Assembly: GCA_001949185.1 (NCBI GenBank)
Contig: BDGG01000002.1
Span: forward strand, 7,740,448-7,804,447
DNA length: 64,000 nucleotides
Direction of reading: 5' to 3'
Source: Ramazzottius varieornatus
Taxonomy: Eukaryota > Animalia > Tardigrada
The notes beneath the pieces were generated by a model, which was not told the DNA's origin, did no database searches, and saw only the letters and a list, made by a program, of their open reading frames with translations. Shown here piece by piece: positions 9,713 to 56,356 of this stretch. The translations under genes and the position numbers were made by a program. Position 1 is the stretch's first letter. The number at the start of each line of letters is the position of its first letter.

Positions 9713-12700
9713 ATGGCTTCAAGTTCCGCTCTTGTGACCATCAACAACGTGAAATATTCAGGTGTGTAAAAACGCGGATTCAAAGAGTGGTGTAGTCAAG
9801 ACTCAGAAAAACAACGGCTTCTCTTCTTTTATTTCGGACATTTTCTGTGACTAACTGCCACTGATTATTCCAGTTGGGGAAGCCTACTCGGATACGACAC
9901 TCAATCAGTTTCTTCGGAAGACTCTCGGTCTAACCGGAACCAAAGTGCTGTGTCGGGAAGGTGGATGCGGAGTCTGTGTGGTGTATGTCGAAGAGCCTGA
10001 TCCCAACCAACCAGGAAGTACCATCAAGCGCTCCATCAACTCGGTAAGTGTCTCGGCTCCATCGTCAAAGCAATTAGACGCTGCGGTCCTTATGATATTT
10101 TGTTTCAGTGTTTGTGTCCGATTCTTTCCTGCGACGGCTGGAACATCACCACGGTCGAAGGCACCGGAAATCAGAAGAAGCCGAGTCAGCTTCAGCAGCA
10201 GCTGACCAGCCACAATGGAACGCAGTGTGGCTATTGCACACCCGGAATGGTCATGAACATGCATGCGTAGGTTAAATTCACTTCAGTAATAAAGCGGGAA
10301 ATACGGTAACTTGGCGCGGTATTCTTGTTCACAGACTGACGAAAATGAGCGAAGGCCAAAAGCTGACAGAACAGACGGTCGAGAACTCGTTCGATGGAAA
10401 TATCTGTCGCTGTACAGGTACTGTCTCATCTGAAGCATTGCCGTTATCGACATTTTTAACACGGAAACAGTCTTCTTTTCGGTAAATTGTCACCGCGTAA
10501 TTTTTGTTCTAGGCTATCGGCCAATCTTGGATGCGTTCAAGACCTTCGCTCACGATTCCAAAAGCAAACTTCTGGATCTCGAAGTGAGTTTTCGAACTTC
10601 TTCGACTTTATGGTAGCTTCTCTTAATTTCGTTTCTGATAGGATGTGGGACTCAGTTTGCAGATCTGTCCCAAGAACGGTTCGCCATGTAGCGGTCGCTG
10701 TCATCACGAGCACGACTCCATAACCGAAGTCTTACCCACTCACGACCTCGGGGCGTCTTCCTCTTGGTACCGGCCAAAGAGCCTGGCCGAGCTCTACACA
10801 CTTCTCGAGGGTCCTTTGAAAGGCAAGAAGGTCTTCCTGGTCGCTGGTCACACGAGCGTGGGGGTGTACGACGATGGACCGTGTGACGCACTGGTCGACA
10901 CGAAGAAAATCGTGGAGCTGACACAGATCACGACCGATGCGACTGAAGGGGTGACTGTAGGAGCTAACGTTAGCTTGACTCACCTGATTCAAGTATTGAG
11001 AGAACCGGCCGCCAAGAACCCAGCACAATATCATTACATGGACGTTCTGGCGGACCATATCAGTAAAGTAGCCAGCGTACCTATCCGTAACGTAAGATAT
11101 CACCGTCTACTCTTCAGAACCGAGCTACAGCATCCGTTATTTTCATGTCATTCCTTTTACCATAGGCGGCATCGTGGACTGGCAACCTTATGTAAGACCA
11201 CACCTGCAACAAAAATTGAACTGCGAACTTCGGCGAACCAACTGGAAAAGGTCGTTTTCCCAGGCGGCGCACTGCGTCAGTGTTATTGACTGAAAGTGGG
11301 CGCCACGTGAAGAAATGCTCGTTCTGAGTTTGTTCACCGAGCTCCCAGTTAATTATTAACATTTAATTATCCTTTCCAATTTGGCAAATGAGTTCCTGAC
11401 GGTTTGTCTCCAGTTTTAGGTATCTTTCAGGTTGAAGCGGGCGCACAATGAGTTTCCGTCTGATGTCTTCCTGTGCTTTGAGCTGGCGGAAGCTGTCATC
11501 ACGATTGGTATGTCGTCCTCGCTTCTTTATAATGCTGGAGTTCGACAGGTCGTTTTTAAACCGGTGGTTTTCTGTAGGAAATAAGGACGGGACAAGTTCG
11601 GTTTCACCTAGTCAGCTTCTCACTACCAACTTCGACGACCCTAAGCAAGTCATCCTCAAGGCTACCTTTCACCCGAAACCTTCCAACGTGCTGTACCGCA
11701 CGTATAAGATTATGCCGCGTTCACAAGTAAGTTTTGATACCAGCTTGAGGTTAATTTAGTTGAAGCGAATGCTTAATCCTTGCGGAGCTAAAATATGATC
11801 TTTTAATGACAGAACTCGCACGCTTTGGTAAATGCTGGTTTCCGAGCAGAAGTGGACAGCTACCAGACGGGCAAGCGCATCATTCGCAGCATTGCCCTCA
11901 TCTTCGGCAACATTAATCCCAGCTTCATCTACGCCATACATACGCAAAAATTCCTCATCGAAGCCGACATGGCCGATCCAGCCGTCCTTCAAGGTAGCAC
12001 AATCTTCCATGCTGTTGATATTCAGAGCAGAATTGAAGGTACTAATCAGAAAGTGCTCACTCTGTAGGTGCCTTGGGCAGGCTACGGAATGAGTTACAGC
12101 CAAAAGCCTATCCTGCAGAACCAAGCTTGGAATACCGGACCAACCTAGCTTGCGCCCTTTTCTACAAGGTGCAAAAAAGCACAAAGTGGCAGCGCACCAG
12201 ACAAACTTGACAAGATCGTTTGATCGTTTCGTCGAACGGCGCACACTGTCAGATGATAACACTCTAAGTGTGCGCCACTCGTGAAATCGATCTTGTTGAG
12301 TTTGCTGTGGAGCTGCCATGTTTCCCTATTGTTAAAATCAAAGCTGCGTCGTCGTGTACGAGGGTACGATGTGATCCTAGTTCGCTTTGGAAATTCTGGG
12401 TGATGTGGCAGACCAACGGTATCGCTCAGCTGTGGGTCAGCTGGTCCGACCACTATCTTCCGGTCAGCAAGATTACCCCACCGAACCGAAGAATTACCCA
12501 CTAACTCTGCCCATACCGAAGCTGGAGTCTGTTGTTCAGTGTACAGGACAAGCAAAGGTAAGTGAAAGTAATAAGTGATACATCAGAAGGTGTTCACCTC
12601 CGAAGAACTACCGGCTGATATTGCAGTATATTTCCGATATGGATTCTTCGACCATGCTGCATGCCGCGTTCGTCTTGTCGGAACAAGGAAGCGCCGACAT

Positions 12701-15700
12701 CACGCAGATTGACAGCACGAACGCCCTGAAGGTGAATGGTGTGGTGCGAGTCATCACTTCCATCGACATTCCCGGATCTAACAATTTCGTGGCGCCTCCT
12801 GGTGTGGCAGAGGAACTGCTGGCAAGCCGTCAGGTGGTCTTTGCCGGACAACCTGTAGCCATCGTTGTTGCCAGTAAGCTGTCTGAGCTGCACCCATACA
12901 GAAATTTGATACGGGAAGATTAAGGAATTGTCTGCTTTTAGCTTCTCAGGTGGCGGCAGAAAACGGCGCGAAACAGGTCAAGGCAGTCTACGCTAACGTG
13001 AAGACTCCCATTCTGACCTGTCAGGATGCCATTCAAGCAAAGTCCTTCTACCCCGCAATTGACGACCTGAAAGTTGGCGATGCGGAAGCGGCTATCGCAT
13101 CTGCGCCACATCAGGTGAAAGGCTCGATGGAACTTGGTGGGCAGATGCACTTCTACATGGAGACTCAGGTAAATTAAATGCACCAAGTCAATAATGTTAT
13201 GATAAGAAAGGCTTCGTACGGGTCAGCCAGCTCAGCGATTTCCGTTTCTTTATAATTGTAGGTCGCCGTTTGTACCCCAACCGAGGATGGCATGGACGTC
13301 GAAGCCGGAACTCAATGGGTGGATGCTGTTCAAGATGGTGTCGCGCAAGTACTAGCCATGAACAAAAGCTCGTAGGTTCCCGATGAGGCTTCTGCCGTTG
13401 CTGTACTGCGCAGTATCACATTGATAAACACCAATGGTTGTTTTTCTATCGCATAGTATCAACGTCTCCTGTAAACGTGTCGGAGGAGCTTATGGAGGTA
13501 CGTACAGGATGAATTCGGTCACGTAGTCTTTCCTTTGTTCTTTCGGATTAACCACACCTTATCACATGCTGTAGGTAAAATTACCCGGAATACGTGGATC
13601 GCTGCATCGGCAGCACTAGCTGCTCAGCTAACCGGTCGACAAGTCAAGATGCATCTCAGCTTCTGGGATAACGCCAAGGTGAGTTCGTCTCTCATATTCG
13701 TCTACCTACGGCTCCTTTGTTTAGCAAAACGCCCGTTACAGCTTGTAGGGAAACGTAACCCATACCACACCGAGTACCACGCCGGCTTTGACGCTGACGG
13801 CAAACTTCAAGGCGTCTACATCAACGCTTACGTCGACTGCGGCGCCGCACCGAACGACAACCCCATCAGCGGCTTGGGTACCTGGGGTGACAACGGTACT
13901 TACCTTCCTTTCAGAGAAGCAAGTCGCTCTCCAGCTTACGGAGTACCAGTCGCACCGAATCTTCTTCCTTTACAGCCTACTTCTGTCCAAACTGGAAGTT
14001 CAGCATGACAGCGTGCAAGACGAATACACCACCCAACACTTGGACTCGCGCACCGGGTAGCGTTATTTTGAAAGCTCCGCAGACAAACTTGACGAGTCTG
14101 TTGTCCCAAGCGACGCAAGTTTCCAGCCAACAATGCCGGGAACATGCGCCACTTGGTAACAGAGTCAGACTTTACAAGATTGTTTTTCTCAAGTGACGCA
14201 CTGTTTAGGTCGAAAACACTTATGGTATGCGCCACTTACGTCTCGTCTCGTCACAACGATCTAGTCAAGTTTTCCTGACGAGACCTAGTTCCATCCATTG
14301 CTGTGCCGAGTGTCCTAATGTGACTGGTGAATATTTCTAGGCTCAACGGAAGCAATCTACTTTATCGAACACGTCATGGAGCACATCGCAAAGTTCCTGA
14401 ACAAGCCCTCCATCGACGTCAAGTACCTCAACCTGTTCAAGAACGGCGACAAGTGTATCACTGGCCAGACCATCGACAACTGCAACCTGACGGATCTAAC
14501 CCAACAGTTCCTGAAGAACGTGGAGTATCAGAAGCGATTCAACGCAGTTCAAATCTTCAACAAGGAGAGCCGATGGAGGAAGAAGGGCATTAGCGTGACA
14601 CCCATGAAGTATGGAGTGGTCTGGAACAGCAACCTTTACAATTGCTTCGTCACGATTTTCCACAACGGCGGCGCGGTCGCCGTCGCTCATGGCGGAAGTG
14701 AAATTGGCCAAGGTAATAATATCGTGGTAATTTCGTCTGTGTTCTATTGAGTTGAATTCAGAGTATGCGGGAGCTCGGCAAAGAAGCTGGATCTGATGAT
14801 TTTTCCAAGTGGCGCACGCTTACAGTTAATAACACTGAAACTATGTGCCACTGGAGAGATCAATCTTGCAGTCTCTTTCGCTAAGTTCCCTTTACATTTC
14901 TCCTTATTTTGCCTTCAGGAATCAACACAAAGGTGGCACAAGCTGTGGCATACGAGCTTGGCATCAGCATGGAACTCATCTCCATCAAGCCTAACATGTC
15001 GCTGACCAACGCTAATGCAACGTCTACTGGCGGAAGTGTGACAAGCGAACTGGTTACTCTTGTAAGTGAACATAATCTACGCAGATAATACTGCCTCAAG
15101 AATTGAGGAGGACTGAGTGAACTAATACTTGTTGGGTATTGTAGGCTGCATTGGACTGTTGTAAGCAGTTACTGTCGAGAATCAACCCGACACGGCAGGC
15201 CATGCAAGGCAAGTCCTGGCCGGAAGTGATCGAGAAGTGCTTCACGGACGGAATGGACCTGACTGCTCGGTCTTGGTATGTCTAACCACCTTCGGATAGA
15301 CGTTTGCTAGGGTGGAGGAAGAACGTTTGAGTGATGGTTACATTCTTTGGTTTCAGGGTGGCGCCGAAGACTGACGTGGCACCGATCTACTACAACACCT
15401 GGGGTGTAACCTGTACGGAAGTGGAAATTGATGTGCTGACCGGCGAACATCAGATCCTGCGACTGGATGTACTTCATGACTGTGGCGAAAGCATGTCACC
15501 CCTGATCGGTAAGATAAAATATCCAGCAGCCAACTTACCTCTCATGCCTAACGTGCATTGCCTGATTATGGGCAGGGACATAATTTTGGGCACCGAAAAG
15601 GGCACTGATTAGCCAATCACTCGAAGTGCTGCCGCTTTCGGCTGGTGCAAAATTTTGTCCATGCCCATAATTAGTCAAATTACGTGTACTTCCGCTCATC

Positions 15701-16639
15701 ATTTATCTTGCATTCCATCAAGGAAATGCTCTGTATGGAAACGCGCAAACCGTGATTAGGTTTTTTGTGAGGACTTCGGGAAGATTTAGCAGCAGCATTT
15801 TTAGCCTATTTGCTGCTGACGGAATTTCGCAGTGGTCCCTGTAGCAGGAATGGTGCTGGAATCTGTTACCCATTGTATTGTTTTGCTGTTGCAGATATCG
15901 GCCAGATAGAAGGAGCTGTGGTGATGGGATTAGGGTACTACACTTCCGAGCAGCTAAAGTACGACGAGAAGAGCGGACAGCTCCTGACATACAACACATG
16001 GTACTACAAGCCACCGACTACCAAGGACATTCCGGCCGACTTCCGGGTCCAGATACTGAAGAACGCTCCGAATCCAGTCGGAGTACTACGCAGTAAAGGT
16101 ACAAATTCCTTCTTGTCCAAACTCAGTCCCAGATTTTCCCGTGAATTTGATCATGGTTTTGTTTCAGTCGTGGCCGAACCTCCACTCTGCATGACATGCT
16201 CGGTCGTATTCGCTTTGCGAAATGCCTGTGACGCGGCTCGACAAGAAATCGGCAAAGGCCGAGAATGGTTCCAACTCGGTGAGACTATAGACTGCCTTTC
16301 AACAAATGTTTTACGTATATACGAGACGTCGACAAATGGACTGAACGCGACTTTGATTTCAAATGGCGCACATACGCACGCTAATTGGCTCAAAGTGTGC
16401 GCCACTGGGGAAATTCGTCATGTTCAAGTCATTTCCCGACATCCCGTATGGCTGGTTTCCCCACCTTCATTGACTGAGTTGGGACTCGACTGTATATTCA
16501 TTCCATCGCTGTTTTCTCTCCAGATGCTCCGATGACTGTTGAACGCACCCAGGGTTACTGTCTACCCGACATCTCGCAGTACACTTACGGACCAACGAAA
16601 CCTACCAAGATTTCCCTTCGGCTCAGGCTCACCCGGTGA
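9713..16639 (+). CDS. Aldehyde oxidase / xanthine dehydrogenase family molybdo-flavoenzyme (invertebrate AOX-like), >20 exons
   Basis: 2Fe-2S motifs GTKVLCREGGCGVC, TQCGYCTPGMVM, GNICRCTGYRPIL; FAD domain LVAGHTSVG, VASVPIRN; Moco domain HFYMETQ, KRVGGAYGGKITR, DVLTGE..DCGESMSP.IDIGQIEGAVVMGLG, SKVVAEPP. Confidence 0.95.
15562..15674. mobile_element. Small MITE-like inverted-repeat element in an AOX intron
   Basis: ATTATGGGCAGGGACATAATTTTG at ~15565 pairs with CAAAATTTTGTCCATGCCCATAAT ending ~15671. Confidence 0.6.
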
Positions 16640-18891: not shown

Positions 18892-19991
18892 ATGTTGCCC
18901 ATCTTCGCCTTCCTGTTAATAGGTAAGTCTGACGTTGACTGTTGCGCGATCGGTACGCAGCCCTTTCGATCCATAGCCGCTTATGTTAAATTTTCTCTTC
19001 TTATTTTCTAGGTAGTGCCTGTGGGGCGACCTTGAACATCGTCTCTCCGAGAGCTGCTCCAGTCCCGGTTGTGCTGATTGCCCGAGCCGACAACATTACC
19101 GAAGAGAAAACCACTCTTAAGCCAGTCGGCCTCAGCGTGGTTCCACTGGTGGAAGTGACGACCCAAGCAACGACCGAGCACGTCGAGACGACCATGGCCC
19201 CAGCCACAACCAAGGCACAAGTGACCGCTCTTCTTCAGATCGCCACCGTCACCCCTCGACCCGCCAAGAACAACGGCAACAAGAAGAACCCAGCCAGGGT
19301 TGCTGCACACAGAACTGTCATGACCACCGAAGTACCTCAGTCTCGTTTCAACACCGTTAACGCTACACGTCTGCCAGCTACCACGCCATCTCACGGTAAG
19401 AAGAGCGGTGGAAGGTTGACTCGTATCGAGAAGACGCAGGTGGAAAAGACGGTGGTCATTGGAGAAGGACTGGGCGGCGACGATCTGCAGACAGCTTTGC
19501 GCGGCCGACGAGAAGAGGCCACCACAGCCGTCGTCCAGATCATCCAAGGCAGCACGACCGAGACTCCAGTGGTCAATGGGACTATTCCCGTCGTAGTAGT
19601 CAGTGCTACTGTCATCCCCGTGGAGGTGGTTAACGTGACGGTGGGCAGTGGCGAAGTGGTCAAGAAGGAACTGGACAGACCGGCTCGTCAATTGGTGACT
19701 GGTGGTGGTGTGGGAGGTGTGCCAATGGGACCCGTTGGAGGTGTGGGAGCCGGCATGGGACCTGTGGGAGGTATGGGTGGACTGGGTGTTGGTGGTTTCA
19801 ATGGTGGCATGGGTATGGGTGGTCTTGGTGGCGGTATGGGACTAGGTGGCTTCAATGGCGGTTTGGGAGGCTTTAATGGTGGTATGGCTTCTTTTGGTGC
19901 AGGTGTGGGAGGCATTGGAGGAGGAATGGGCACTGGACTTGGTGGAGCTGTCGTCGAAGATACCGTCACCGAAGAGATAGTTACCCCTTAG
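18892..19991 (+). CDS. Secreted Thr/Val-rich protein with Gly-Met/Gly-Phe repeat tail (structural/cuticle-like)
   Basis: Exon 1 MLPIFAFLLI + exon 2 GSACGATLNIV.. forms a signal peptide; ~320-aa ORF ending in GGFNGG/GGMG repeats. Confidence 0.75.
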
Positions 19992-25467: not shown

Positions 25468-26391
25468 TTACTTGTGGGTATCACGAACATCGACCGTACG
25501 GACTTGCTCTTGGCGTTTCTGCATGGCCGGAAGCGTTGGATCCGCAGGTTCAGCTTTCACATTGCTAACCTTGCTCCCTCCCATATAGTTCGTGTAATAA
25601 TAATACCCACCAGCAGCCACTGCAGCCGCGATAGCCAGCGGTACCATCATGCCACCCCCACTAGCTTTCGGTAGAGCGGCACGGCCCGCGTTGATCCCAG
25701 AACTTCCGCCTCCGCTAGCACCTGGAGAACCTCCGATTCCCGCAGCTGAACGGGCATGGCTAGACGACTTGTCGACCCTACCAGACTCAGTAGCTGTATT
25801 GCGCGGAGTCCAGTCTTGGCTCTGTTGGGTGGTGCCTGGGGTTCCTGTCGTACCGGTGTGCGACGCAGCCTTGCCACCAGTTGAACCGGAAGTACTTGAG
25901 CCAGACATTCCAGTCGATCCAGAAGAACCACTTGAGCCTGAAGACCCACTCCCACCGGAGCCAGAAGAGCCCGATGAACCACTGCTACCACCTTGCATGC
26001 CGCGGCTGCCACCACCAACACCCGACTGCTGACCGAAACCGGAAGCCGCTCCTGCGCCGGTAACTGGGTTAGCGCCGCCACCGGTGGACGCAGTATGGCC
26101 AGAAGAACTTCCAGCCATGCTAGTTGACCCTGCTCCTGTACGTGGACCACTTCCAGAACTTCTACTGCTGCCTTGGTTCATTTCCGCTTGTCCACCGGAC
26201 TGTCCAGCCGAGCCATGGCTGCTGCCACCGCCCATGTTACCACTAGCGCTACCAGCGGGGCCGGACTTGGCATTCATTCCACCGGTGGTCTGACCTGTTT
26301 TTCCCATGGCTTCTCCCGATGCTCCAACGCGATTGCCGATGTCAGAGTTGGCGTTGCTGCCACCGGAAGATCCCTTGTTGGAGGACGACAT
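25468..26391 (-). CDS. Gly/Ser-rich disordered protein with C-terminal TM (cluster member A)
   Basis: 307-aa intronless ORF; TM LPKASGGGMMVPLAIAAAVAAGGYYYY; tail contains RTVD. Confidence 0.8.
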   Translation of the reverse strand: MSSSNKGSSGGSNANSDIGNRVGASGEAMGKTGQTTGGMNAKSGPAGSASGNMGGGSSHGSAGQSGGQAEMNQGSSRSSGSGPRTGAGSTSMAGSSSGHTASTGGGANPVTGAGAASGFGQQSGVGGGSRGMQGGSSGSSGSSGSGGSGSSGSSGSSGSTGMSGSSTSGSTGGKAASHTGTTGTPGTTQQSQDWTPRNTATESGRVDKSSSHARSAAGIGGSPGASGGGSSGINAGRAALPKASGGGMMVPLAIAAAVAAGGYYYYTNYMGGSKVSNVKAEPADPTLPAMQKRQEQVRTVDVRDTHK

Positions 26392-26397
26392 GGTGAT

Positions 26398-26607
26398 TTA
26401 GGGGTTTAGGGGAGCAGAAACGGCACTGGCTTGAGCTGCTACACGAGTTTGCTCTTCGGCACGATCCCTGGCCTTCTTCTCCAACTCGACTTCTCTCGCC
26501 TTTTCCAAGATAGTCGGTTTGAAGATGTAGGTACCTGAAATGATACCCAGACACACAAAGAACGTCGTCAAGAATCTAGGATCACGGAAAAAACCTGGGC
26601 CAAGCAT
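26398..26607 (-). CDS. PIGBOS1-like mitochondrial outer-membrane microprotein
   Basis: 69 aa; TM LGIISGTYIFKPTILE resembles human PIGBOS1 LGIAGGVYIFQPVFEQ (recalled from memory), followed by a charged E/K helix; splice acceptor TTTTGCAG 7 nt upstream of the ATG. Confidence 0.65.
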   Translation of the reverse strand: MLGPGFFRDPRFLTTFFVCLGIISGTYIFKPTILEKAREVELEKKARDRAEEQTRVAAQASAVSAPLNP

Positions 26608-26713
26608 GCCTCACCTGCAAAATCGTCGTAAAATCGAGAAAACTATTGAAACTTGATCACGCCGGCCTACCCAGCTCACGGTGGTGCTTGCGATAATGAA
26701 ATGAGCCCAACAA

Positions 26714-26791
26714 TGACGTCAAGAGCAAGGTGAATGGCTTGATTGCTAACTTGTTCGAACGGGATATCAGGGCATTATCGCCTTGACGTCA
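26714..26791. promoter_or_regulatory. Two perfect CRE palindromes (TGACGTCA) in a putative bidirectional promoter
   Basis: TGACGTCA at 26714-26721 and 26784-26791, between divergent genes. Confidence 0.45.
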
Positions 26792-26987
26792 ATGAGGTAA
26801 AACGATTGGCGAGAGCCATGGCGTTTCACAGAAGGAGCTCGTTTTTCGGGGTGAAAAAATTTTGCCATTCGGGAATATATATCGTTTTATTGGCAGGATC
26901 AGCTGTTCATCCGCACGTATTTCTCCTCCGTTGCTTCTCTTCCTGCCTTCTAGGAACATCTTCCTCGTTTGCCGACAGCTGTGGAAG

Positions 26988-27422
26988 ATGTCTACCACCG
27001 GATCGCAGATCGCAATCGGAGCGGCGGCCGCCGTGGCGCTTGGACTGGGGTACATGGCCTATAACAACTCTAGAAAGACTACCCCCTTCGCTGCAACTCA
27101 CGGACAAACGCTTCCACACCAACCTGCCCCTGCTGGAGTAAAAGGAGTCGACGTATTTAATGCAAATTACATTGAGGTAAGTTGCGTTAATGAGTAAGAG
27201 CGACGACCACAGTGCGAACTCTTGCTCAACTCGGTTTGTTAGTAAGTGATGTTATGTCGAAATTAGTCTCCGATCCGACCTTCGAATCTTCAGTTGACGT
27301 GAATGGTTATATTGTTGCAGGCTCGACACAATCCCGGAGTGAGAGATATCCCACAAGGTGGGCACTATGGTACCGATACTCGCTCGACAGTCGATCAAGG
27401 TTCGTCGCGCCCGCAGAAATGA
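26988..27422 (+). CDS. Small single-pass membrane protein (cluster member C), two exons
   Basis: MSTTGSQIAIGAAAAVALGLGYMAY..PAPAGVK..NYIE (donor at 27177) / ARHNPG..GTDTRSTVDQGSSRPQK* (from 27321). Confidence 0.75.
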
Positions 27423-27999
27423 AAAGCTGGAAGACCTTGGTAAAGAGTGCTAACCAAATAAGATGCGACCTTGGAATCCTGTGAAGAGTGTCGAGTTGTC
27501 AGCTTATGAATGTCTTCTTCGTGTTCGTTTGGTGTGATATCAAGACCCCTACAGTACTTCCCAAACTCCGATATTCTAGCTGTACACTACCAAAGCTGCA
27601 CTGGAGGTTTTGGCGTCTGGCTGTGATGGCTGGCAGGTGACTAGCCTCCTTCTTATTAATTAAACGGTGTTGCGGTGTTGCTTTTAACTTTTACCCACTG
27701 GGGCGTTAGTTTGTTTCGGTTTTGGATGACGGAAACCAGTTATCCGTAGTCCTTACTCGGGACCGAAACTTTGAAAAAAACCTGGAAGTCTCTCCTCTGT
27801 AAACATCGTAAATTACTTGGAAAAAGGACGAACAATACGTCATGCCAAGGACCGAGATTCGAGAACCTTCAGCTGTAAAACGTAAAATGAAAATAAACCA
27901 TCGCCAATTCTGTAAACGTTCCATGGATCAGAATGTACATTCGCCAGAGAAATAAATTAACAGTCAGTCAATGGGGAAATTATTGATAAAATTTAATCA

Positions 28000-29343
28000 G
28001 CATGTTCGTTCAACTCTTTCTGCTCGCACCACAGTTCGTTCAGCTCGATACGTGGAAGATCTTCGACTCCTCGAGTCAGCGGATGCGGAGGAGCTGGGAG
28101 ATTCAAATGCTGGCGGTAAGTTGTCAGATAGCGAGCACAAAACGCAAGCACGCTTCTTGGGTACTTTTGTCCACGTAGGATGAGGGTAGATGGCTCGAAG
28201 TAATCCGTTTCCGCGTCATGCGTGCTACAAAAAGATCAAAGGGACTATTATCAAGACTCCAGTCGGAATTGTTGTTCTTATTTATTGGAAAACGAGCGAA
28301 CAGATTCTTTTGTTTCTTACTGATTCTTCAGATACTTGAACACGGGATCCTTCGCCGGTAAACTCCTGAGGCAGTCTTCGAGCCTATGCAGCTGATCCGG
28401 AAGATATGGCCAGAACGCTATACATTGTTCCCATGAAGGAACCCAGAAGTCTTCTCCTTCTTCTGGAAGATTTAAGATAGCCTTGTGAAACACTGTTTCC
28501 CACGACCTTATACCGTCTGACTCTATGCGGTTTGTCCACCTGGGTTCTCCCACAGTCTCTGCTAGGAATGCGGACATGTACAGCATTGCAGATACACGTG
28601 CCTAGCCTAAATTTGGGGATGGACAAAAATGTGGGGAACGGAGCGAAAGCGACACGGGCCAGCTGTGGTGACCAATCAANNNTCCGTCCCCACATTTTTG
28701 TCCACCCCACATTTAGGCTAGGCGCGTGTACGGAAGAACGACCAACAGACGGAGGAATCAGTCCAACGTCGGTGAGGTACTGTGAACCTGGCATGGGGAA
28801 GTCACAAAGAGGAACCTGAACTCTGTACAAGATGATCTGCTGTATTTGAGGACCGCTCCGACGCTCTCAGCGTGTCTTCACAGTGAGTCAGCTTGACGTT
28901 GGCAAAGTCAATAATCACACAACGTGTTTTTTCGGTAACCATCCTTGTTCGTCCCTCCCGGGCCGCTTTCCGAGTTCCGCAAGGTGTCTGTAGCAGATCG
29001 AATGTTAACTTCCATTTTGCCAGATCGCGACTGCCTAAGCCGATGACGAATGATTTTGACAGGTAATCCCGAAGGATGCTGTTCCACGCCGAAGACACTC
29101 TGGAAATGAAAAAATGTGCGACGACATTGCGGACCTTCATTTGTTCCCAGGCATCTAACAGCGCACCTTTGACAAGCTTCTTGTTGTAGTGTTGGGAGGT
29201 GTTTGAAGATATCCCAAATGATGTCGTAGTTCAGATCGTCCCACCTCAGCATCGGCAACACAGGCATCCGGTCCACTCTTTAGCTTCTTCTTGGGAAGAT
29301 TCGCAATCCTCAGCTCCCGCGTAGCTTCCTTTCGCTTAGGCAT
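28000..29343 (-). pseudogene. F-box protein gene, disrupted by a MITE insertion and apparent frameshifts
   Basis: F-box-like WDDLNYDIIWDIFKHLPTLQQEACQR/VSSAWNSIL across a GT-AG intron; downstream frame broken at 28595-28728. Confidence 0.6.
28595..28728. mobile_element. MITE with long TIRs and TA target-site duplication (Tc1/mariner-type)
   Basis: TA-CACGTGCCTAGCCTAAAT...ATTTAGGCTAGGCGCGTG-TA; NNN gap inside. Confidence 0.8.
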
Positions 29344-29691
29344 TCCTTCATTTTTTCCCGCTCACCAACACCATCCCGAGCCTTTGAGCACGCTCAGCAC
29401 AGCCGATCAGAATAACCGGACAAACATCGAACAATTCCGGTGCACCATAAGAAAATTTTGAAGAAAATAGAAATTAGCGCTAATTTTTGACGTTACAGAG
29501 TTTGCGATTCGAGGACGGTAACGACACGGTCAATCAACTCGACTTCCAATCAACCCTTCGCATCCTGAGGCCAGAATTTTATGCACCTGACATCGCTAAC
29601 AATTCTGATTCTTCTTTGCAGGGATCTCCCTTCAAGATCCGTACCAAAACATATCTTCTTATTACCCTGAAGTCCGAAGCCAACTTTAACC

Positions 29692-30258
29692 ATGAATGAA
29701 TTTGACAGGTACCATCGACAAGCCGTGGAGCGGGCGGAGAAGGAAGGACGGATGCCACCATTGCCTCCACTGCGCCCCTTGCGTGGTAGAGAGCTCCGTC
29801 CAGAGGAGGATCTCTTCGAGCCCCGTTACTTTGCTCCCAGTCGCAACAACATCACTCGATCCAGCCTCAAGCCCAACAGGACACCTGGACTGCTAGCAGC
29901 CACCGCTACCATCAGCGTCGCCGTTTCATACCTCACTTATCGTCAAATGTACAAGCCATCCCGAGTGCCTGCTAACTACGACCAGTCCAATCTCGCCATG
30001 TGCCAGAAAAAGTATGGACCCATACCTGACCATGTGGTCCCCATCAACACGCTGGTGTCGTCTGGTAAGCAACAGAATCCTGATGCTCGGTATGGACCTG
30101 ATGCCGGAAACTCACTCTATTATACCCGGAACAAAGTCAACGCAGCAGAGCCTGCTTACACCTTTCAGAATTGGCATGCATGGGAGACACCCCTCGTTAA
30201 ACGGGAACAAGCTATGGAGAAAGGCGAAGAGATCATCAGATCTATTCGGGATCAGTAA
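29692..30258 (+). CDS. Hypothetical single-pass membrane protein (cluster member D, divergent)
   Basis: 188-aa intronless ORF; TM GLLAATATISVAVSYLTY followed by SRVPANY. Confidence 0.7.
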   Translation: MNEFDRYHRQAVERAEKEGRMPPLPPLRPLRGRELRPEEDLFEPRYFAPSRNNITRSSLKPNRTPGLLAATATISVAVSYLTYRQMYKPSRVPANYDQSNLAMCQKKYGPIPDHVVPINTLVSSGKQQNPDARYGPDAGNSLYYTRNKVNAAEPAYTFQNWHAWETPLVKREQAMEKGEEIIRSIRDQ

Positions 30259-30980
30259 ATGCGTGTATAGTTTTGCGATTGAAGTTTTATTCAGCGTGTG
30301 TTTTTACTTTGTGGTAGATGTGCAGAATTCGAATGTTTTTCCTGTGTCGTTATAATTAATAGAGAATTCCCCTGGTGCCAAGTGATTTCAGTACGAGGGT
30401 ACTTGTTTACGGACGTCAAAATATCACTCTAAAAACCTTCACCAACTACGTCCTGTGGTTAGGTTCTTGATACCTTCACAAGCACGGCTGTCTTCGGAAA
30501 ATCGAGTCTACCGGAAGTGAGCTACTGTACACTATTGACTGCGACACTTCCGGCCACGGGAGACAACTCAGTTTGCGTTGGCGCCGAAAGATGAGGGGAC
30601 CCCAGATTAGATAAGGTACAATATAATTAAATTATGTGCAGGCGGAAGAAAGGCACTAAGGAACCTTAGAACAGAATCGACAGTTTCGTAGGACCGCATT
30701 TCTGGGTCCTCCGCGCGAAATCTTCATCCATTGCAAACGCAGCACTGGACGGCTCTGTGGAGAAAGAGACTTTGTCTTCGGGACTCGTCAGTCGTCACTA
30801 CAGGAGAAATCCAGTATACTATAATCAACTTGAAATAAAAGTTACCTAGCAGCATTTGTGGTGCTAACGATAAGGCAAAAGGGTCGCGGGAAGAACAAGA
30901 CTCTGCCGACTACCATCCTCGTTTTGGATTAGTTTGTCTTCGACTCCTGTACTATCCTGACTTTTATTATATTCCCCACA

Positions 30981-31781
30981 ATGTCGGTTACAAGGCTGCT
31001 GATGCGGGCAGCAGCACGGTTTGCATTGCCCAGAAGTTATCTTACGTATCCCGGAAGCGCCGGATACAATGGTCCTTCCACTCTCTCCTCATTATTTCCC
31101 ATCAGGAGCAACGGATTATTTACCCAACAAACCGCCAACCTTCACAGTACACGTTTGCTTCGAGCGGGTGACAAAAAAGGGAAGAAACCAGAGAAAGGTG
31201 GTAAGGGAGGCAAAGGTAGCAAAGGTGGTAAAGGCGGCGGAGATAAGCCATCGAAAGGCGGCTCGAAAGGTGGTTCGAAGGGCGGGGGTGGAAAGCCAGG
31301 AAAGGGAGGTTCTAAGGGTGGCTCGAAGGGACCTGTTAGTAAAGCCGTGAAAGAAGGGGCGAAGGAGCTGAAGCACAAGGCTGAGAAAGCCACCAAAGGT
31401 GGACATGGAAGCAAAGGGCCGCAAGGCAAGTCGGAGAAGAGTGGTGGTGGAGGCAGTTCAGCCCTGGCCTTTGGTGGAGGCCTGATTGTCGGCGGACTGG
31501 GTGCTTACCTGGCTACGCAGATGGTCAACTCTAAGGGCAGCGGAGGTGGTGGTGGAGGCGGCCATGGTGGATCCGGAGGTGGCCATAAGAGCAGTGGTGG
31601 ACATCATCCCAGCACGTCGTCCCATCTAGTACCGCAGGATACTAAGTATGTCAGGAACAAGTACGACAACACCATCGGACCTAATAATACCCTCAGCTCG
31701 CGACCCGTATACGATAGAGATGGCAGACCGTTGGATGATCGAAGGACTGTCGATGGCGGAGAACTCCATCCTAGACAATAA
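30981..31781 (+). CDS. Putative mitochondrial Gly/Lys-repeat single-pass protein (cluster member G)
   Basis: Arg-rich, acid-free presequence MSVTRLLMRAAARFALPRS; GGKGGSKG repeats; TM ALAFGGGLIVGGLGAYLA; DTKYVRNKYDNTIGPNNTL; DDRRTVDGG. Confidence 0.8.
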   Translation: MSVTRLLMRAAARFALPRSYLTYPGSAGYNGPSTLSSLFPIRSNGLFTQQTANLHSTRLLRAGDKKGKKPEKGGKGGKGSKGGKGGGDKPSKGGSKGGSKGGGGKPGKGGSKGGSKGPVSKAVKEGAKELKHKAEKATKGGHGSKGPQGKSEKSGGGGSSALAFGGGLIVGGLGAYLATQMVNSKGSGGGGGGGHGGSGGGHKSSGGHHPSTSSHLVPQDTKYVRNKYDNTIGPNNTLSSRPVYDRDGRPLDDRRTVDGGELHPRQ

Positions 31782-32331
31782 GAAAGTTGGATTTAACATT
31801 TCTCCCTGTAATGCAGCTTTTCAAACGTATGATGCCCTTCGCCATGTGAAGTATCTTTCGCAGTTCCTTTTTCTGTGTATACCTTACAATACTCGTTTTT
31901 CTCCTACCGCGTCCGGTATGCTCGATGTCGAAGTTCTCAAGCCAAACCTGCTAATCCGAACGAATCTTTCATTATCAACGAAAAAAGGTTCGCTTTCCAA
32001 AAATGCATGCTTTGACAGACCGCCGTCTTCTACTAACGAAACGTATAGTGATATTGAAGATATCGCAAACGCTGGCATAACTAACGCGTACTTGATAGCA
32101 TTCGACCGCACGAGGCGATAAAAATAGGGAAACCCGTTAAACTACACGAGCACTGATTCCAGCTTGGTGCAAGTCCCGGAACCTTTCCAGATACTTAACG
32201 TATCAGCGTACTAGTTTATGATCTCGGACGCCTGCGAAAAAACACAAAACAAACCATGTTTGCGCACAAGTTTACTTCAATTCCGGTTGACATAATTATC
32301 ATCAAGGTCTGTGTCGACCATGCAGCGAAAC

Positions 32332-32754
32332 TTACGATGTGCCTTGATCGACAGTATATCGGGTGTCAACGCCATCCGTCTTGCCCAATGTATTGTTCGA
32401 CGCGATGTAGTTAGGTCCAGTATCAGCTATGGTGTTATCGTGCTCGTTTTTCACGTATTTCGTATCCATCGGTCCTCCCTGGGTCTTCATGCCAGCGGGA
32501 ACATGTGTCGGTCCAGCGCTGTATTTGTCCGCGTAGAAGTTCTGGTAGGCGTAGAACAAAGCAGCCGCCCCAGCCGCACCCATTAGTATAGCCGGAATGT
32601 TAGCTCCTCCACCTGAGCTGGAAGAAGAGGTAGATCCCGTGGTCCCAGTATATCCCGTCGTCCCAGTTGATCCCGCTGTCCCAGTTGATCCCGTCTGCGC
32701 GGCCATTAGCTGACGTCCGCCCGTCGAAAACCTCCTGCACGCCTGTCGCAACAT
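32332..32754 (-). CDS. Putative mitochondrial single-pass protein (cluster member E)
   Basis: MLRQACRRFSTGGRQL presequence; GST repeats; TM IPAILMGAAGAAALFYAY; THVPAGMK; DTKYVKNEHDNTI; DTRYTVDQGTS. The stop overlaps a possible GTAAGT donor. Confidence 0.8.
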   Translation of the reverse strand: MLRQACRRFSTGGRQLMAAQTGSTGTAGSTGTTGYTGTTGSTSSSSSGGGANIPAILMGAAGAAALFYAYQNFYADKYSAGPTHVPAGMKTQGGPMDTKYVKNEHDNTIADTGPNYIASNNTLGKTDGVDTRYTVDQGTS

Positions 32755-33185
32755 CTTGCCCGCCGATTCACACACCTGCAAAGCAAAAAGAGCAGTCAAT
32801 CGTACAGGATACTCCGAACACTGTACAGGTAGTAAGAATTACGAAAACAGTTCGAGAGGAAATTTACAGACATCTCTGACATCACTTCCAACCGGAAGTC
32901 GCGATTTTGTCCGTCAATCAACATTACGTCAATCAACCGTTCAAGTTGTGTCCATTGGGAATTTACCGCTTGCTGATAAGTACAAGTACGTACCCGTCAG
33001 TACCGTACTTTGGGCCAAAAGTACACAGTAACGCATTGGCAATCCCCATCAGCTGTTTACGTTCTCCTGTTTCCGCTCTCCTGTTCTCCCAACCTCAAAG
33101 AATCGTCTCAGCATTGCTCCCACTCTTTCTTCTCCAACGAGACAGCTTCTTTTCTCTTGTGTTGCAGGCTACTTCCGCAGCGAAG

Positions 33186-33740
33186 ATGTCACATAGAAGC
33201 GAAGGCCAGGGATCGGACAGTCGATCAGGACCAGCCATCGGGAGCGCCCACAAAGCCCCAACATCCTCGGCTGGCATGGGATCGACACACGGACAAAACC
33301 CTCAGACGTCCGTCAATACTGATAACCCAAGAGGCTTCCAGGTTGGAGGAAAGTCTCAGGTTGCAGCTGGACTGCCAAAGGGAGGTGGAATGCCGATTGT
33401 AGCTATGGCTGGAGGCGCTCTCGCTGTTGGAGCTGCATACTATTTCTGGTACGAGTAATAAAATTCTCGTACAGTAGTTAATTTCTCCAAGCTCCGGTGC
33501 AGGTTGTTTAAATTGATCGTGGTCTTTTTTTGCAGGAACTACGGAACAAAGAGCCATACCGCGGTCCCGACAGGAATGCAACCGACGGACCGGGATGGAA
33601 GCAAGAGCAGTTCGAGCCGTGACACTGGCTCTATTCCCGAGAGAAATCCCATCAACACCAACATCAGTAGCGGACCTGGTAATTACACCAAGGATAACGC
33701 TAGTTCAGGTGGCATCGGCTGGCAAAACGCTAGCAAGTAG
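33186..33740 (+). CDS. Gly/Ser-rich single-pass protein (cluster member F), two exons
   Basis: Exon 33186-33448 ..LPKGGGMPIVAMAGGALAVGAAYYFW / exon 33536-33740 NYGTKSHTAVPTGMQ..SGPGNY. Confidence 0.75.
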
Positions 33741-42258: not shown

Positions 42259-45200
42259 ATGGAATCCTCCGAGAGCGAGGAGTCTGCGGATGGACAACCG
42301 GAGAAAGTTATTACCTCTAAACGCGCCAGCGGATCATCTGCAGCAATCTGGTGGCAGGCGTTATTTGTATTTGTTCTTTCGGTCGTTTGTTACATGAATG
42401 CAGCGGAATGCGATCTCGTCTTTGACGATATTTCGGCCGTGAGAGATAACAAAGATCTACGGCCGGCCAGTCCGCTGAAGAACCTGCTGTTCAACGATTT
42501 CTGGGGAACACCAATGTCCAAGGTAATCGGGCATCTTGGCCCCAAACGGTGAAAATTCTTCCATGTCTTTCTTTGCAGGAAAACAGTCACAAATCTTACC
42601 GGCCGTTTACTGTCTTAACGTTCCGCTGGAACTATGCTTTCGAAGAAGCAAATCCTTATGGATATCATGTGGTCAACATTGTTCTTCACGCTGTAAACAG
42701 CGTCGTGATTCTCAAGTAAGTTAAGAATTTTTGACCAGAATTTCAGTAGAGTCAAGTGGGCGGAGTTGTATCTGCGCATGTGCGCATCGTATCATTTGTA
42801 CTGTTGGTTACGTCATCGTAGACGCGCATTATAATGGCTAATCAGAAACGAGGGGCCTGGTTTTCTGTGTCTGACCACAGGTCGTCATGTTTTTCAGGCT
42901 TTACAGACTGTTTTTGACGTCGAGGGGCGCATTTGTTAGCGCCTTACTGTTTGCACTTCATCCCATTCACACCGAAGCGGTATGCACGATCACTATTGTA
43001 TTTGCTTGAGAAACCTTGAAGTTGTGTTGATCAACAAGCACTCGAGTAATCAATGGGCGATTGTTTGGATATAGGTTACGGGTGTTGTTGGACGCGCCGA
43101 GCTTTTGTCGACATTCTTCTCGGTGCTACTGTTCCTTCTGTATGCCGGCACTTCATTAACGAGTATGTTACTATTTACACCATGATGAAGTTGATGAGCT
43201 ATTCATCAATTATGTCCCATTTGTCCCACATTGAGTGATGCTTTCGGAAATGCTTGCGTTCATTATTGATTTTCTTCCGTTTCCTTCCGCAGGATGGAGA
43301 AGGACTGCTACGCTTCCTGCTCTACTCGGCTTGGCCCTCTTCAGCAAAGAACAAGGCATTACCGTCGTGGCTATCTGCCTTGCCTACGAAATTTTCTGTG
43401 AACAGCAAGTAAGCAGAAGACGAATGAATTCACTCAGATGGTTATCCTAAGTGGCGCACGTGGTCATTGTTATTAGCTGGGAGCGTGGGCCACTGGGAAG
43501 GACGATCTGCATGTATTCATCTGCCAACGTTCCAAATATCGATTAAAAAGAACTTCGGGAAAAAATATTGACAGAAATACGGTTGATCACAACGTCGATA
43601 ATTGTACAATTAAATTTCTGTTGACAGATGGACGTCAAAGAGTGCTTACTGACGCTAAAAGACATCTTCCGCGAGAAGCCGAAAACAAGTCCGGCAGTGG
43701 CGAAAACAGTGAAGCGAATGTCGGTTTTGTTCGTAGCATCGATACTTTTGATGTTATGGCGCATGAAGATAATGTCCGGTCAGCTTCCCGTCTTTACTCC
43801 CTTCGACAATCCGGCGTCGACTTCGACGTTTCCGGCCAGACAGCTGACTTATCTGTATCTTCTTCCGTTGAATGTTTACCTTCTTCTGTTTCCCAATGCT
43901 CTCCTCTGTGACTACACCATGGGGACCATTCCTTTGGTCGAGTCGATGTCGGATGTCAGGAACGTGGCGACATTGGCCTTTGTTGTCCTAACAGGCTGCC
44001 TGCTGTGGAAGGTGGTTACCTGTCGGAACGTGGCCGATCGATGCGTGCTAGTCATGTCCGGCGCGTGGACAGTCTTCCCTTTCCTCCCAGCCTCCAATTT
44101 ATTCTTTCCGGTGGGCTTTGTCGTGGCCGAGAGGGTCCTGTACATGCCCAGTATCGGCTTCTGTTTACTGATGGGATATGGATATCAGTCGGTAATGCGA
44201 TGTGTAACCACGCAGAAGCACGAACGGGTAGCGAGATACTTCTTCAATTTCACTGTCCTCATTTGCCTAATCGCCTTTGGAACCAGGACGTATGTCCGGA
44301 ATAAGGACTGGATATCCGAAGACACTCTCTTCCGTGCTGGTAAATCAATTCCAATTTTCCTCACAGATTTTCCTTGTCTTCAAATGTTTTTACCCTATTT
44401 TTTTCCCAATTAAGTATTCGTTAATTTGAGTCTATTGTTTCTAGTACGGCAAACGCACTCGACAAAATTAATATCCCAGGTGGCGCACGCTCGCATTGTT
44501 GTTGGCAGAAGCATGCGCCACTCGCAACCGCGATCTTGTCGAGTTTTCCCAAGTGGCGCAGGTGTTCATCTAACTGGCTGGAACCGTACGCCACTTGTGA
44601 GAGGGATTTTGTCGAGTTGGTTTTTCATCGTCATTTTATCGAGAATTTTTCGAAACTCAATTTTGGAGTTCAACTTCTGATTGAATTTTTTACCGTGACT
44701 AATTTCTCGGGGGTTTGCAGGTTTAAAAGTCACGCAGAAGAACGCCAAGGTTTTCAACAACATAGGCCATGTTCTGGAGAAAACCAAGAGCTTCGACGAA
44801 GCCTTGAAGTTTTTCACCAGTGCCACCAAAGTCCAGCCGGACGACATTGGTGCATGGAACAACGTAGGTCGCACCCTCAGCACGCTCAACCGGACCATCG
44901 AAGCTGAACTGGCATGGCGAAGGGCCAAAGACCTTCTGCCGCAACCGAAGCCCGGTCAGCCTTACCGCGCACGCATCGCTCCCGCCCACCTGAACGTCTT
45001 TCTCAACCTGGCCAACATCATGGCCAAGAACGCCACTAGGTTGGAAGAAGCTGATCAGATTTATAGACAGGCCATCAGTATGCGAGGGGACTATGTCGAA
45101 GCGTGGATTAACAGGGGAGATGTCTTGCTGAAGATGAACCGGACGGAAGAGGCGTTGAGGGTGTATCAGAGAGCGGCGGAAATCGACCCGACGAACCCGG

Positions 45201-55700: not shown

Positions 55701-56356
55701 TATACCTATGTTCCTGTCCGGCCGCAAAATTGGCGTTCTTTTCCACTAATCGAGTCAAATTGGCGATCTCCATCTTGAGGGTTGTCACAGTCTCGCCGGC
55801 CTTGTCTTCCCTTTCATGAGCTTCGTCCAACATTTTCCAGGCTTTCTCAATCTCTTTCTTCAGAGCTTGAATCGTCGCTTGGTCTTCTTGAGCGAGTCGT
55901 GTGGCAGTGGTTATTCGTTGGGAATTAGCGACGATCTCGGCGTGGAGATCGCGACATTTACTCATGAGCTTCATCTCGTTCTCGTGGGCCATTTTGATGG
56001 AGTTGTGGAGCTTCTCGTACTCGGTACGGAATTTACCGAGGCTTTCGTTACCCATGAGATCTTTGATGACGGCTTGGAAATCTTTCTCCATATCTTCCAT
56101 GAGAGCTTCGTCGTGGGATAAGCGGACGTTGAGATCACTGAGCATTTTCTCGTCGATCTGGTAAGGGACAGCACCGGTATTGCCTTCGCGGTTGCCGCCA
56201 TGCGATAAGCTGTCGCGGTTCTTTCTGGATGCGCTGCCACGGCTAACATGATGACCGCTTTCTCTTCTGTTGCTCGCCTGCAAAACGACGAAGATGACAG
56301 TACTAAAGCTGAAGAAACATTAAAAGAGGGACGTAATCAGGGAACTGTCCTACCAT
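52737..56356 (-). CDS. CFAP58: Cilia- and flagella-associated protein 58 (CCDC147)
   Basis: Long coiled coil with FRTEYEKLH, LKKEIEKAWKM, ERDILGTQVIRRNDELTLL, HRWRALQGNDPSTYELILKIQ. Confidence 0.88.
53180..53285. repeat. Hairpin repeat copy in a CFAP58 intron
   Basis: TTCCCAAGTGGCGCA..GTGCGCCACTTGGGAA. Confidence 0.85.

What the first reader, a model, noticed from the sequence alone, without database searches (positions are those of the whole stretch)
25468..33740. Clustered family of disordered, single-pass, probably mitochondrial membrane proteins (candidate undescribed system)
Seen: five ORFs (A 25468-26391, C 26988-27422, G 30981-31781, E 32332-32754, F 33186-33740) combine low-complexity Gly/Ser/Thr/Lys arms with one Ala/Gly-rich TM ending in aromatics (AAAVAAGGYYYY, AAAVALGLGYMAY, GGLGAYLA, AAGAAALFYAY, ALAVGAAYYFW). 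Shared post-TM motifs: VPAGMK/VPTGMQ/APAGVK (E,F,C); DTKYV[KR]N..DNTI..GPN (E,G); DTRYTVDQG/DTRSTVDQG/DDRRTVDGG/VRTVD (E,C,G,A). G and E start with Arg-rich, acid-free presequences. Established: presequence plus small-residue TM ending in Tyr is typical of mitochondrial inner-membrane/IMS sorting signals. Inference: a lineage-specific paralog family of membrane-tethered IDPs, possibly protecting or shaping mitochondrial membranes under stress. They match none of the tardigrade CAHS/SAHS/MAHS/Dsup sequences as I recall them.
Basis: partly seen in the sequence, partly recalled or inferred. Interest (0 to 1): 0.88.

Follow-up and report, generated by a model that had tools for sequence, protein, structure and literature searches.

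The report
Tardigrade cluster of membrane-anchored disordered proteins
A tardigrade has five neighbouring small genes for floppy proteins, each held in a membrane by one helix; two carry a mitochondrial address tag, none resembles a known protein family, and their function is untested.

Summary
In this Ramazzottius varieornatus window, five ORFs at the stated coordinates each encode a low-complexity arm, one Ala/Gly-rich uncharged helix capped by Tyr/Phe/Trp, and a hydrophilic tail. C and F are spliced, and E has a small 3' intron.

Support for a family is uneven:
- E and G share a conserved tail module of about 45 residues (masked BLASTP 2.6e-8).
- C shares the last 13-21 residues, which is significant only locally.
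- F and A share the helix cap and short motifs that are rare in shuffles.
- This helix type occurs four times in 64 kb, all four in the cluster, against 2 in 200 kb of control genome.

A profile search of 1.84 billion proteins found only one outside relative, an E orthologue. In it the N-terminal signal and the tail are conserved, while the low-complexity arm varies by indels. There is no Pfam or PDB match and no paralogue elsewhere in the genome.

E and G have acid-free, Arg-rich amphipathic N-termini typical of mitochondrial presequences. A, C and F do not.

Verdict: a real, uncharacterised, lineage-restricted paralogue cluster. The mitochondrial reading is plausible for two members, and the protective role is speculation.

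The parts
25468..26391 (-). Member A: 247-aa Gly/Ser arm, helix with YYYY cap, 41-aa tail ending in an RTVD motif; no presequence
   Evidence: ORF. Helix plus juxtamembrane region scores 14.3 bits against the family HMM, reached by 0/2000 and 14/2000 shuffles. Ser is spread over all six codons and there is no DNA tandem repeat. Not in public protein sets.
26398..26607 (-). Neighbour P: 69-aa PIGBOS1-like micro-ORF, in frame with A and separated from it by one TAA plus 6 nt; not a family member
   Evidence: Pfam PF23670, E 8.3e-7, 29.5 bits against a cutoff of 27. No ATG in any frame between the two start codons.
26988..27176 (+). Member C exon 1: N-terminal helix with GYMAY cap, and APAGVK motif
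27321..27422 (+). Member C exon 2: tail ending DTRSTVDQGSSRPQK
   Evidence: Canonical splice sites. C-E masked BLASTP 4e-4. The genome profile that includes C finds it at E 0.002.
30981..31781 (+). Member G: presequence-like N-terminus, Lys/Gly arm (net +27), glycine-zipper helix, tail with the conserved module
32336..32754 (-). Member E exon 1 (RvY_06034): presequence-like N-terminus, Thr/Gly/Ser arm, helix, conserved tail module
32216..32231 (-). Member E exon 2: last four codons (RPRS) plus stop of the 144-aa isoform
   Evidence: P0008 compared with the genomic sequence
33186..33448 (+). Member F exon 1: 68-aa Gly/Ser/Pro arm and helix with YYFW cap
33536..33740 (+). Member F exon 2: tail with VPTGMQ and GPGNY motifs
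29692..30258 (+). Neighbour D: conserved 188-aa single-helix protein inside the cluster. It has a similar Tyr-rich helix cap, but kinship is not shown.
   Evidence: Orthologues at 95% and 70% identity. hhalign against the E/G profile gives E 0.12 over 13 columns.

Best explanation
This is a tardigrade-restricted tandem cluster of paralogous genes for bitopic membrane proteins. Each protein has three parts: a fast-evolving disordered N-terminal arm, whose composition differs between members; one moderately hydrophobic helix rich in small residues, ending in an interfacial Tyr/Phe/Trp cap; and a hydrophilic tail. In E, G and C the tail carries a conserved C-terminal module, DTKYVxN..DNT..GPN....DG.DxRxTVDxG..RP. 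Inferred: E and G are imported into mitochondria through their presequences and arrested in the inner membrane by the helix (stop-transfer), which puts the arm in the matrix and the conserved tail in the intermembrane space. The tail is the constrained working end that docks a common partner or the membrane surface. The arms act as variable hydrophilic or polycationic brushes on the membrane. The small-xxx-small helices may let members associate with each other.
For: Shown:
- Gene models and motifs.
- E-G homology: masked BLASTP 2.6e-8, 21 of 40 tail residues identical.
- Local similarity of C, and motif-level similarity of F and A.
- The helix type is clustered: 4 hits in 8.3 kb against 2 in about 256 kb elsewhere.
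- No paralogue elsewhere in the genome.
- Only one outside relative among 1.84e9 proteins. In that orthologue the N-terminal 20 residues (14/20 identical) and the tail module (35/43) are conserved, while the arm has 17 gap columns.
- AlphaFold2 predicts a single helix, residues 53-78, and nothing else.
- The low complexity of A and G is encoded by all synonymous codons and not by DNA repeats.
- E and G have acid-free, Arg-rich N-termini with Arg spaced on one helix face and RRF/S and PRS/Y sites. Every N-arm is at least as positive as its tail.

Leads only:
- Language-model neighbours of E are single-pass respiratory-chain subunits, with scores below 0.9.
- A PIGBOS1-like ORF lies on the same exon as A. 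Human PIGBOS is a mitochondrial outer-membrane microprotein (PMC6814811).
Against: No expression data could be obtained. No targeting predictor was available, and localisation is untested. A, C and F lack a presequence. C's N-terminal anchor would put a homologous tail on the other side of the membrane unless an upstream exon is missing. With a profile that excludes it, C scores only 11.2 bits (reached by 165/5000 shuffles) and is not recovered genome-wide. The tails of F and A alone score no better than shuffles. G and A are absent from the public protein sets searched. The AlphaFold2 alignment was shallow.
Confidence: 0.55

Rival explanations
1. The proteins are real single-pass membrane proteins of the ER, secretory pathway or plasma membrane, not of mitochondria (type II or III). 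Their Ser/Thr/Gly arms would be glycosylated, mucin-like stalks or cytosolic linkers.
For: A, C and F have no presequence. The Thr/Ser-rich arm next to the helix in E looks like an O-glycosylated stalk. No localisation predictor or experiment was available.
Against: E and G lack a hydrophobic signal-peptide core and have classical acid-free Arg-rich amphipathic N-termini, and E's is conserved in its orthologue. Helix hydropathy is low, about 1.5, which by general knowledge is more typical of mitochondrial than of SRP-targeted anchors.
Confidence: 0.25
2. Only E, G and perhaps C are homologous. A and F are unrelated low-complexity orphan genes that happen to lie beside them and resemble them by convergence or composition.
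For: After SEG masking, A and F have no significant BLASTP hit to the others. Their tails score like shuffles against the tail HMM. F scores only 7.8 bits over helix plus tail, reached by 57-195 of 2000 shuffles.
Against: The helix type is very rare elsewhere and all four window hits are adjacent genes. F has both VPxGM (5e-4) and GPxNY (4e-3), in the same order as E. A's helix cap scores 14.3 bits, beyond all segment-preserving shuffles.
Confidence: 0.25
3. Some or all members are non-functional: young de novo ORFs or chance ORFs in low-complexity DNA that are not translated.
For: No expression evidence was obtained. G, A and P are not in public protein sets. Low-complexity DNA keeps several frames open in A.
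Against: E is annotated with two isoforms. Its orthologue conserves 81% of the tail module. G shares that module at the protein level. In A and G, Ser and Gly use all synonymous codons, including both Ser codon boxes, without DNA repeats, which points to selection on the protein.
Confidence: 0.08

Closest known systems
MAHS and RvLEAM (tardigrade mitochondrial heat-soluble proteins; Tanaka 2015, PMC4326354)
   Same: Found in the same species. They are tardigrade-restricted or lineage-specific, carry an N-terminal presequence, and are largely disordered.
   Different: No sequence similarity. MAHS and LEAM are soluble amphipathic-helix proteins of the matrix, whereas these have an integral helix and low-complexity Gly/Ser/Thr/Lys arms. 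That paper also tested other unnamed tardigrade-unique candidates predicted to be mitochondrial, and ATPM1 (LC002823). Whether E or G is among them could not be checked.
PvLIL transmembrane proteins of the anhydrobiotic midge (PMC7363813)
   Same: A lineage-specific, tandemly clustered membrane-protein family in a desiccation-tolerant animal.
   Different: According to that paper, PvLIL proteins have four to five transmembrane helices and are not disordered. Here there is one helix and long disordered arms. There is no homology.
Single-pass supernumerary respiratory-chain subunits (NDUFB11/ESSS PF10183, Nuo17.8 PF27975)
   Same: Presequence plus one helix plus a hydrophilic tail. They are the nearest named neighbours of E by language-model features.
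   Different: Atlas scores of 0.76-0.80 are leads only. There is no Pfam hit even at E 1 and no PDB sequence match.
PIGBOS1 (PF23670), a mitochondrial outer-membrane microprotein (PMC6814811)
   Same: A genuine PIGBOS1-like ORF lies 6 nt upstream of member A on the same exon.
   Different: It is a neighbour, not a relative. It scores below zero against the family profile.
Dsup-type polycationic disordered regions
   Same: G's arm is a Lys/Gly-rich polycation with net charge +27.
   Different: There is no sequence similarity, G's arm is membrane-tethered, and no nucleic-acid binding has been shown.

Membership tests
CAHS / SAHS / MAHS / LEA / Dsup (known tardigrade protectants) | Detectable sequence homology to the family | tested here: not met
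   The profile of E, G and C against 1.84e9 proteins returns only an E orthologue and one spurious bacterial repeat protein. Pfam shows no LEA or other family.
CAHS / SAHS / MAHS / LEA / Dsup (known tardigrade protectants) | Heat solubility and abundance | not testable with these tools
   This needs proteomics. No family member was found in the held supplementary tables of PMC9592077, one of which was cut when stored.
Presequence-targeted, stop-transfer-sorted mitochondrial inner-membrane proteins (a class, not a homology family) | N-terminal acid-free, positively charged amphipathic presequence | tested here: met
   Met for E and G only: 4 Arg/Lys and 0 Asp/Glu in the first 30 residues, with a high helical moment. 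E's N-terminus is 14/20 identical in its orthologue. Not met for A, C and F.
Presequence-targeted, stop-transfer-sorted mitochondrial inner-membrane proteins (a class, not a homology family) | Single moderately hydrophobic, uncharged helix downstream | tested here: met
   One window per protein with hydropathy about 1.5. AlphaFold2 predicts a single helix at residues 53-78 of E.
Presequence-targeted, stop-transfer-sorted mitochondrial inner-membrane proteins (a class, not a homology family) | Demonstrated mitochondrial localisation and processing | not testable with these tools
   There was no predictor such as TargetP or MitoFates, and no experiment. The RRF/S and PRS/Y sites are read by eye.
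NDUFB11/ESSS (PF10183) and Nuo17.8 (PF27975) | Match to the Pfam model | tested here: not met
   hmmscan at E up to 1 lists neither family.
PvLIL (Polypedilum) | Four to five transmembrane helices and low disorder | tested here: not met
   One helix per protein.
PIGBOS1-like (PF23670) | Pfam match above the gathering score | tested here: met
   Met only by the neighbouring ORF P, at 29.5 bits against 27. None of the five members matches.

The most novel reading that the evidence does not exclude
These are a membrane-integral class of tardigrade-unique disordered proteins in the mitochondrial inner membrane. The conserved tail docks a common intermembrane-space partner. The arms coat the matrix face, and G's +27 Lys/Gly arm shields cardiolipin or mitochondrial DNA much as Dsup shields chromatin. 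Together they would help mitochondria survive drying.
Probability: 0.1. Interest if true: 0.8.

Novelty: new variant of a known kind. Interest (0 to 1): 0.45.

Why it matters
The known tardigrade-unique disordered proteins are soluble: cytosolic, secreted or in the mitochondrial matrix. A clustered family that is anchored in a membrane and may sit in mitochondria would add a missing compartment to that picture. It would also offer small, tractable genes, E and G first, for localisation and knockout tests. For now it is an uncharacterised orphan family with no evidence of function.

Tried and rejected
- **Orthologue context:** The source species and gene neighbours of the orthologues P0003 and P0004 are unknown.
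- **Word-index searches:** E found only itself. The helix plus tail of A found nothing.
- **JGI metagenome scans:** the E/G profile and the D profile were both blank.
- **D as a sixth member:** rejected for now (hhalign E 0.12; HMM score within the shuffle range).
- **C under a profile that excludes it:** not recovered genome-wide.
- **PDB sequence search:** nothing for the E/G or D profiles.
- **Rfam:** no match in the window.
- **Literature:** no paper text holds the locus tags RvY_06030-06035, and nothing was found in the supplements of three tardigrade papers.
- **Joined spliced models:** those of C and F, and E's 144-aa form except as the database's own P0008, were not sent to any remote search. 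C and F were searched exon by exon by reference, and joined only inside local scripts that read the window file.
Full report
**What is there.** The genome is that of the tardigrade Ramazzottius varieornatus. It has 55.8 Mb in 200 contigs, and member E is GAU94216.1, 'hypothetical protein RvY_06034-1'.
- C and F each have one canonical GT..AG intron.
- E has a 104-nt 3' intron whose donor GTAAGT contains the stop codon of the unspliced reading. The database therefore holds both a 140-aa form and a 144-aa form ending RPRS.
- Between C and G lies D, a 188-aa protein with one helix.
- Directly upstream of A lies P, a 69-aa PIGBOS1-like ORF (Pfam PF23670, 29.5 bits).
- The flanking genes are ordinary animal genes: xanthine-dehydrogenase-like, TMTC and CFAP58.

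**Is it a family?** With SEG masking and composition correction, E-G is clearly significant (2.6e-8, 50% identity over 46 residues). C-E is significant only in the local context (4e-4). A and F match nothing.

The E-G similarity is a tail module of about 45 residues. C shares its last block, with 11 of 13 residues identical around DTRxTVDQGxSRP. Against a profile that excludes it, however, C scores only 11.2 bits and is not recovered genome-wide.

For A and F, the tail alone scores like shuffles. When the helix and the tail are each shuffled separately:
- A's helix cap scores 14.3 bits, reached by 0/2000 shuffles, or by 14/2000 when only the tail is shuffled.
- F scores 7.8 bits, reached by 57/2000 and 195/2000.

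VPxGM-type has frequency 5e-4 in F and 3e-3 in C. GPxNY has 4e-3 in F, and RxTVD 5e-3 in A. These patterns were chosen after seeing the data, so the numbers are generous.

An independent argument comes from the helix type: an uncharged 17-mer with at least 8 Ala/Gly, followed by at least 2 aromatic residues. In all six frames of the 64-kb window it occurs four times, and the four are exactly C, F, A and E. In 200 kb sampled elsewhere in the genome it occurs twice. That gives an expectation of about 0.07 for the 8.3-kb cluster.

My reading is that E and G are certain paralogues, C is probable, and F and A are likely but unproven. D shares only a similar Tyr-rich cap (hhalign E 0.12) and is not counted.

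**Range.** No paralogue lies elsewhere in the genome. A profile search that read all 1.84 billion representative proteins found one true hit, P0004 (123 aa, E 5e-23), and one spurious bacterial repeat protein.

P0004 is an E orthologue from an unnamed ENA contig. Compared with E:

| Region | Result |
|---|---|
| N-terminal 20 residues | 14/20 identical |
| Tail module | 35/43 identical |
| Helix | 7/20 identical, same composition |
| Low-complexity arm | 17 gap columns |

A near-identical Logan variant, P0009, differs by an extra arm repeat. Constraint therefore sits on the N-terminal signal and the tail, not on the arm.

My models of G, A and P are not in the 15-billion-protein collection, and A's helix plus tail finds nothing there. 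There is no Pfam, PDB or Rfam match.

**Architecture.** Each protein has one window of hydropathy about 1.5. AlphaFold2 on the E alignment gives a single helix, residues 53-78, and no other structure, with mean pLDDT 43 on a shallow alignment.

The low complexity is a property of the protein, not of the DNA. Tandem Repeats Finder reports nothing inside A and only weak arrays in G and E. A's 63 Ser use all six codons almost evenly and its 75 Gly use all four. This argues that A and G are translated in these frames.

**Targeting (inference).** E and G start with acid-free, Arg-rich segments. In G the Arg residues sit at positions 5, 9, 13 and 18, on one helix face. Both have RRF/S or PRS/Y sites that fit the known R-2/R-3 processing motifs. 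In every member the N-arm is at least as positive as the tail, and G's arm is +27.

These are textbook features of TIM23 stop-transfer substrates. They would place the arm in the matrix and the conserved tail in the intermembrane space. A, C and F lack such a signal. C's N-terminal anchor raises a problem of consistent topology unless a 5' exon is missing.

Two weak leads point the same way:
- The language-model neighbours of E are single-pass respiratory-chain subunits, with scores below 0.9.
- A follows a PIGBOS1-like ORF on the same exon. Human PIGBOS is a mitochondrial outer-membrane microprotein (PMC6814811).

**Mechanism.** I commit, at about 0.55, to the following: membrane-anchored disordered proteins whose conserved tail is the binding end and whose arms are variable brushes, with E and G in the mitochondrial inner membrane. 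A stress-protective role is untested, and I put it near 0.2.

**Comparison with known families.** The family is not related to CAHS, SAHS, MAHS, LEA or Dsup. It differs from MAHS and RvLEAM in being integral to the membrane, and from PvLIL in having one helix and long disorder (PMC7363813). A 2026 review of tardigrade tolerance genes lists no such family (PMC13389832). Tanaka et al. tested six tardigrade-unique candidates predicted to be mitochondrial (PMC4326354). Whether E or G was among them cannot be told from the held text.

**Limits.** The joined spliced models of C and F were not sent to remote searches. They were searched exon by exon by reference.

Noticed in passing
window 26389-26607 (-): The PIGBOS1-like ORF P and member A are in the same frame, separated by one TAA and 6 nt. 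There is no ATG in any frame in the 216 nt between their start codons, and A's start has an ACC ATG context. This fits leaky scanning, reinitiation or readthrough on one mRNA. An AG acceptor sits just upstream of P's ATG.
   Followed up: partly
window 29692-30258 (+): D is a conserved 188-aa single-helix protein with no Pfam or PDB match. Its first 62 residues are almost invariant in an orthologue that is only 70% identical overall. Its helix ends in a Tyr-rich cap like the family's.
   Followed up: partly
window 32216-32336 (-): E's 3' intron donor GTAAGT contains the stop codon used when the intron is retained. Splicing swaps the C-terminus between ..QGTS and ..QGTSRPRS, and both forms are in public records.
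   Followed up: yes
window 19032-19991 (+): A 319-aa ORF with a long Gly/Met/Leu-rich low-complexity C-terminal region (GGMG/GGFNGG-type repeats). It is unrelated to the cluster.
   Followed up: no
window 28680-28682: A three-base N run (assembly gap) lies between C and D.
   Followed up: no
window 10645-16535, 43628-44413, 53231-56283: Exons of a xanthine-dehydrogenase/aldehyde-oxidase-like gene (FAD_binding_5, MoCoBD_2), a TMTC O-mannosyltransferase and CFAP58.
   Followed up: no
not located in the window (gene RvY_06036, named by its locus tag only): RvY_06036.1 (223 aa, pI 4.87) is listed among the stress-dependent condensing proteins in a supplement of PMC9592077. By its locus tag it should lie near E (RvY_06034), but I did not map it. 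None of the five family members appears in that supplement.
   Followed up: no
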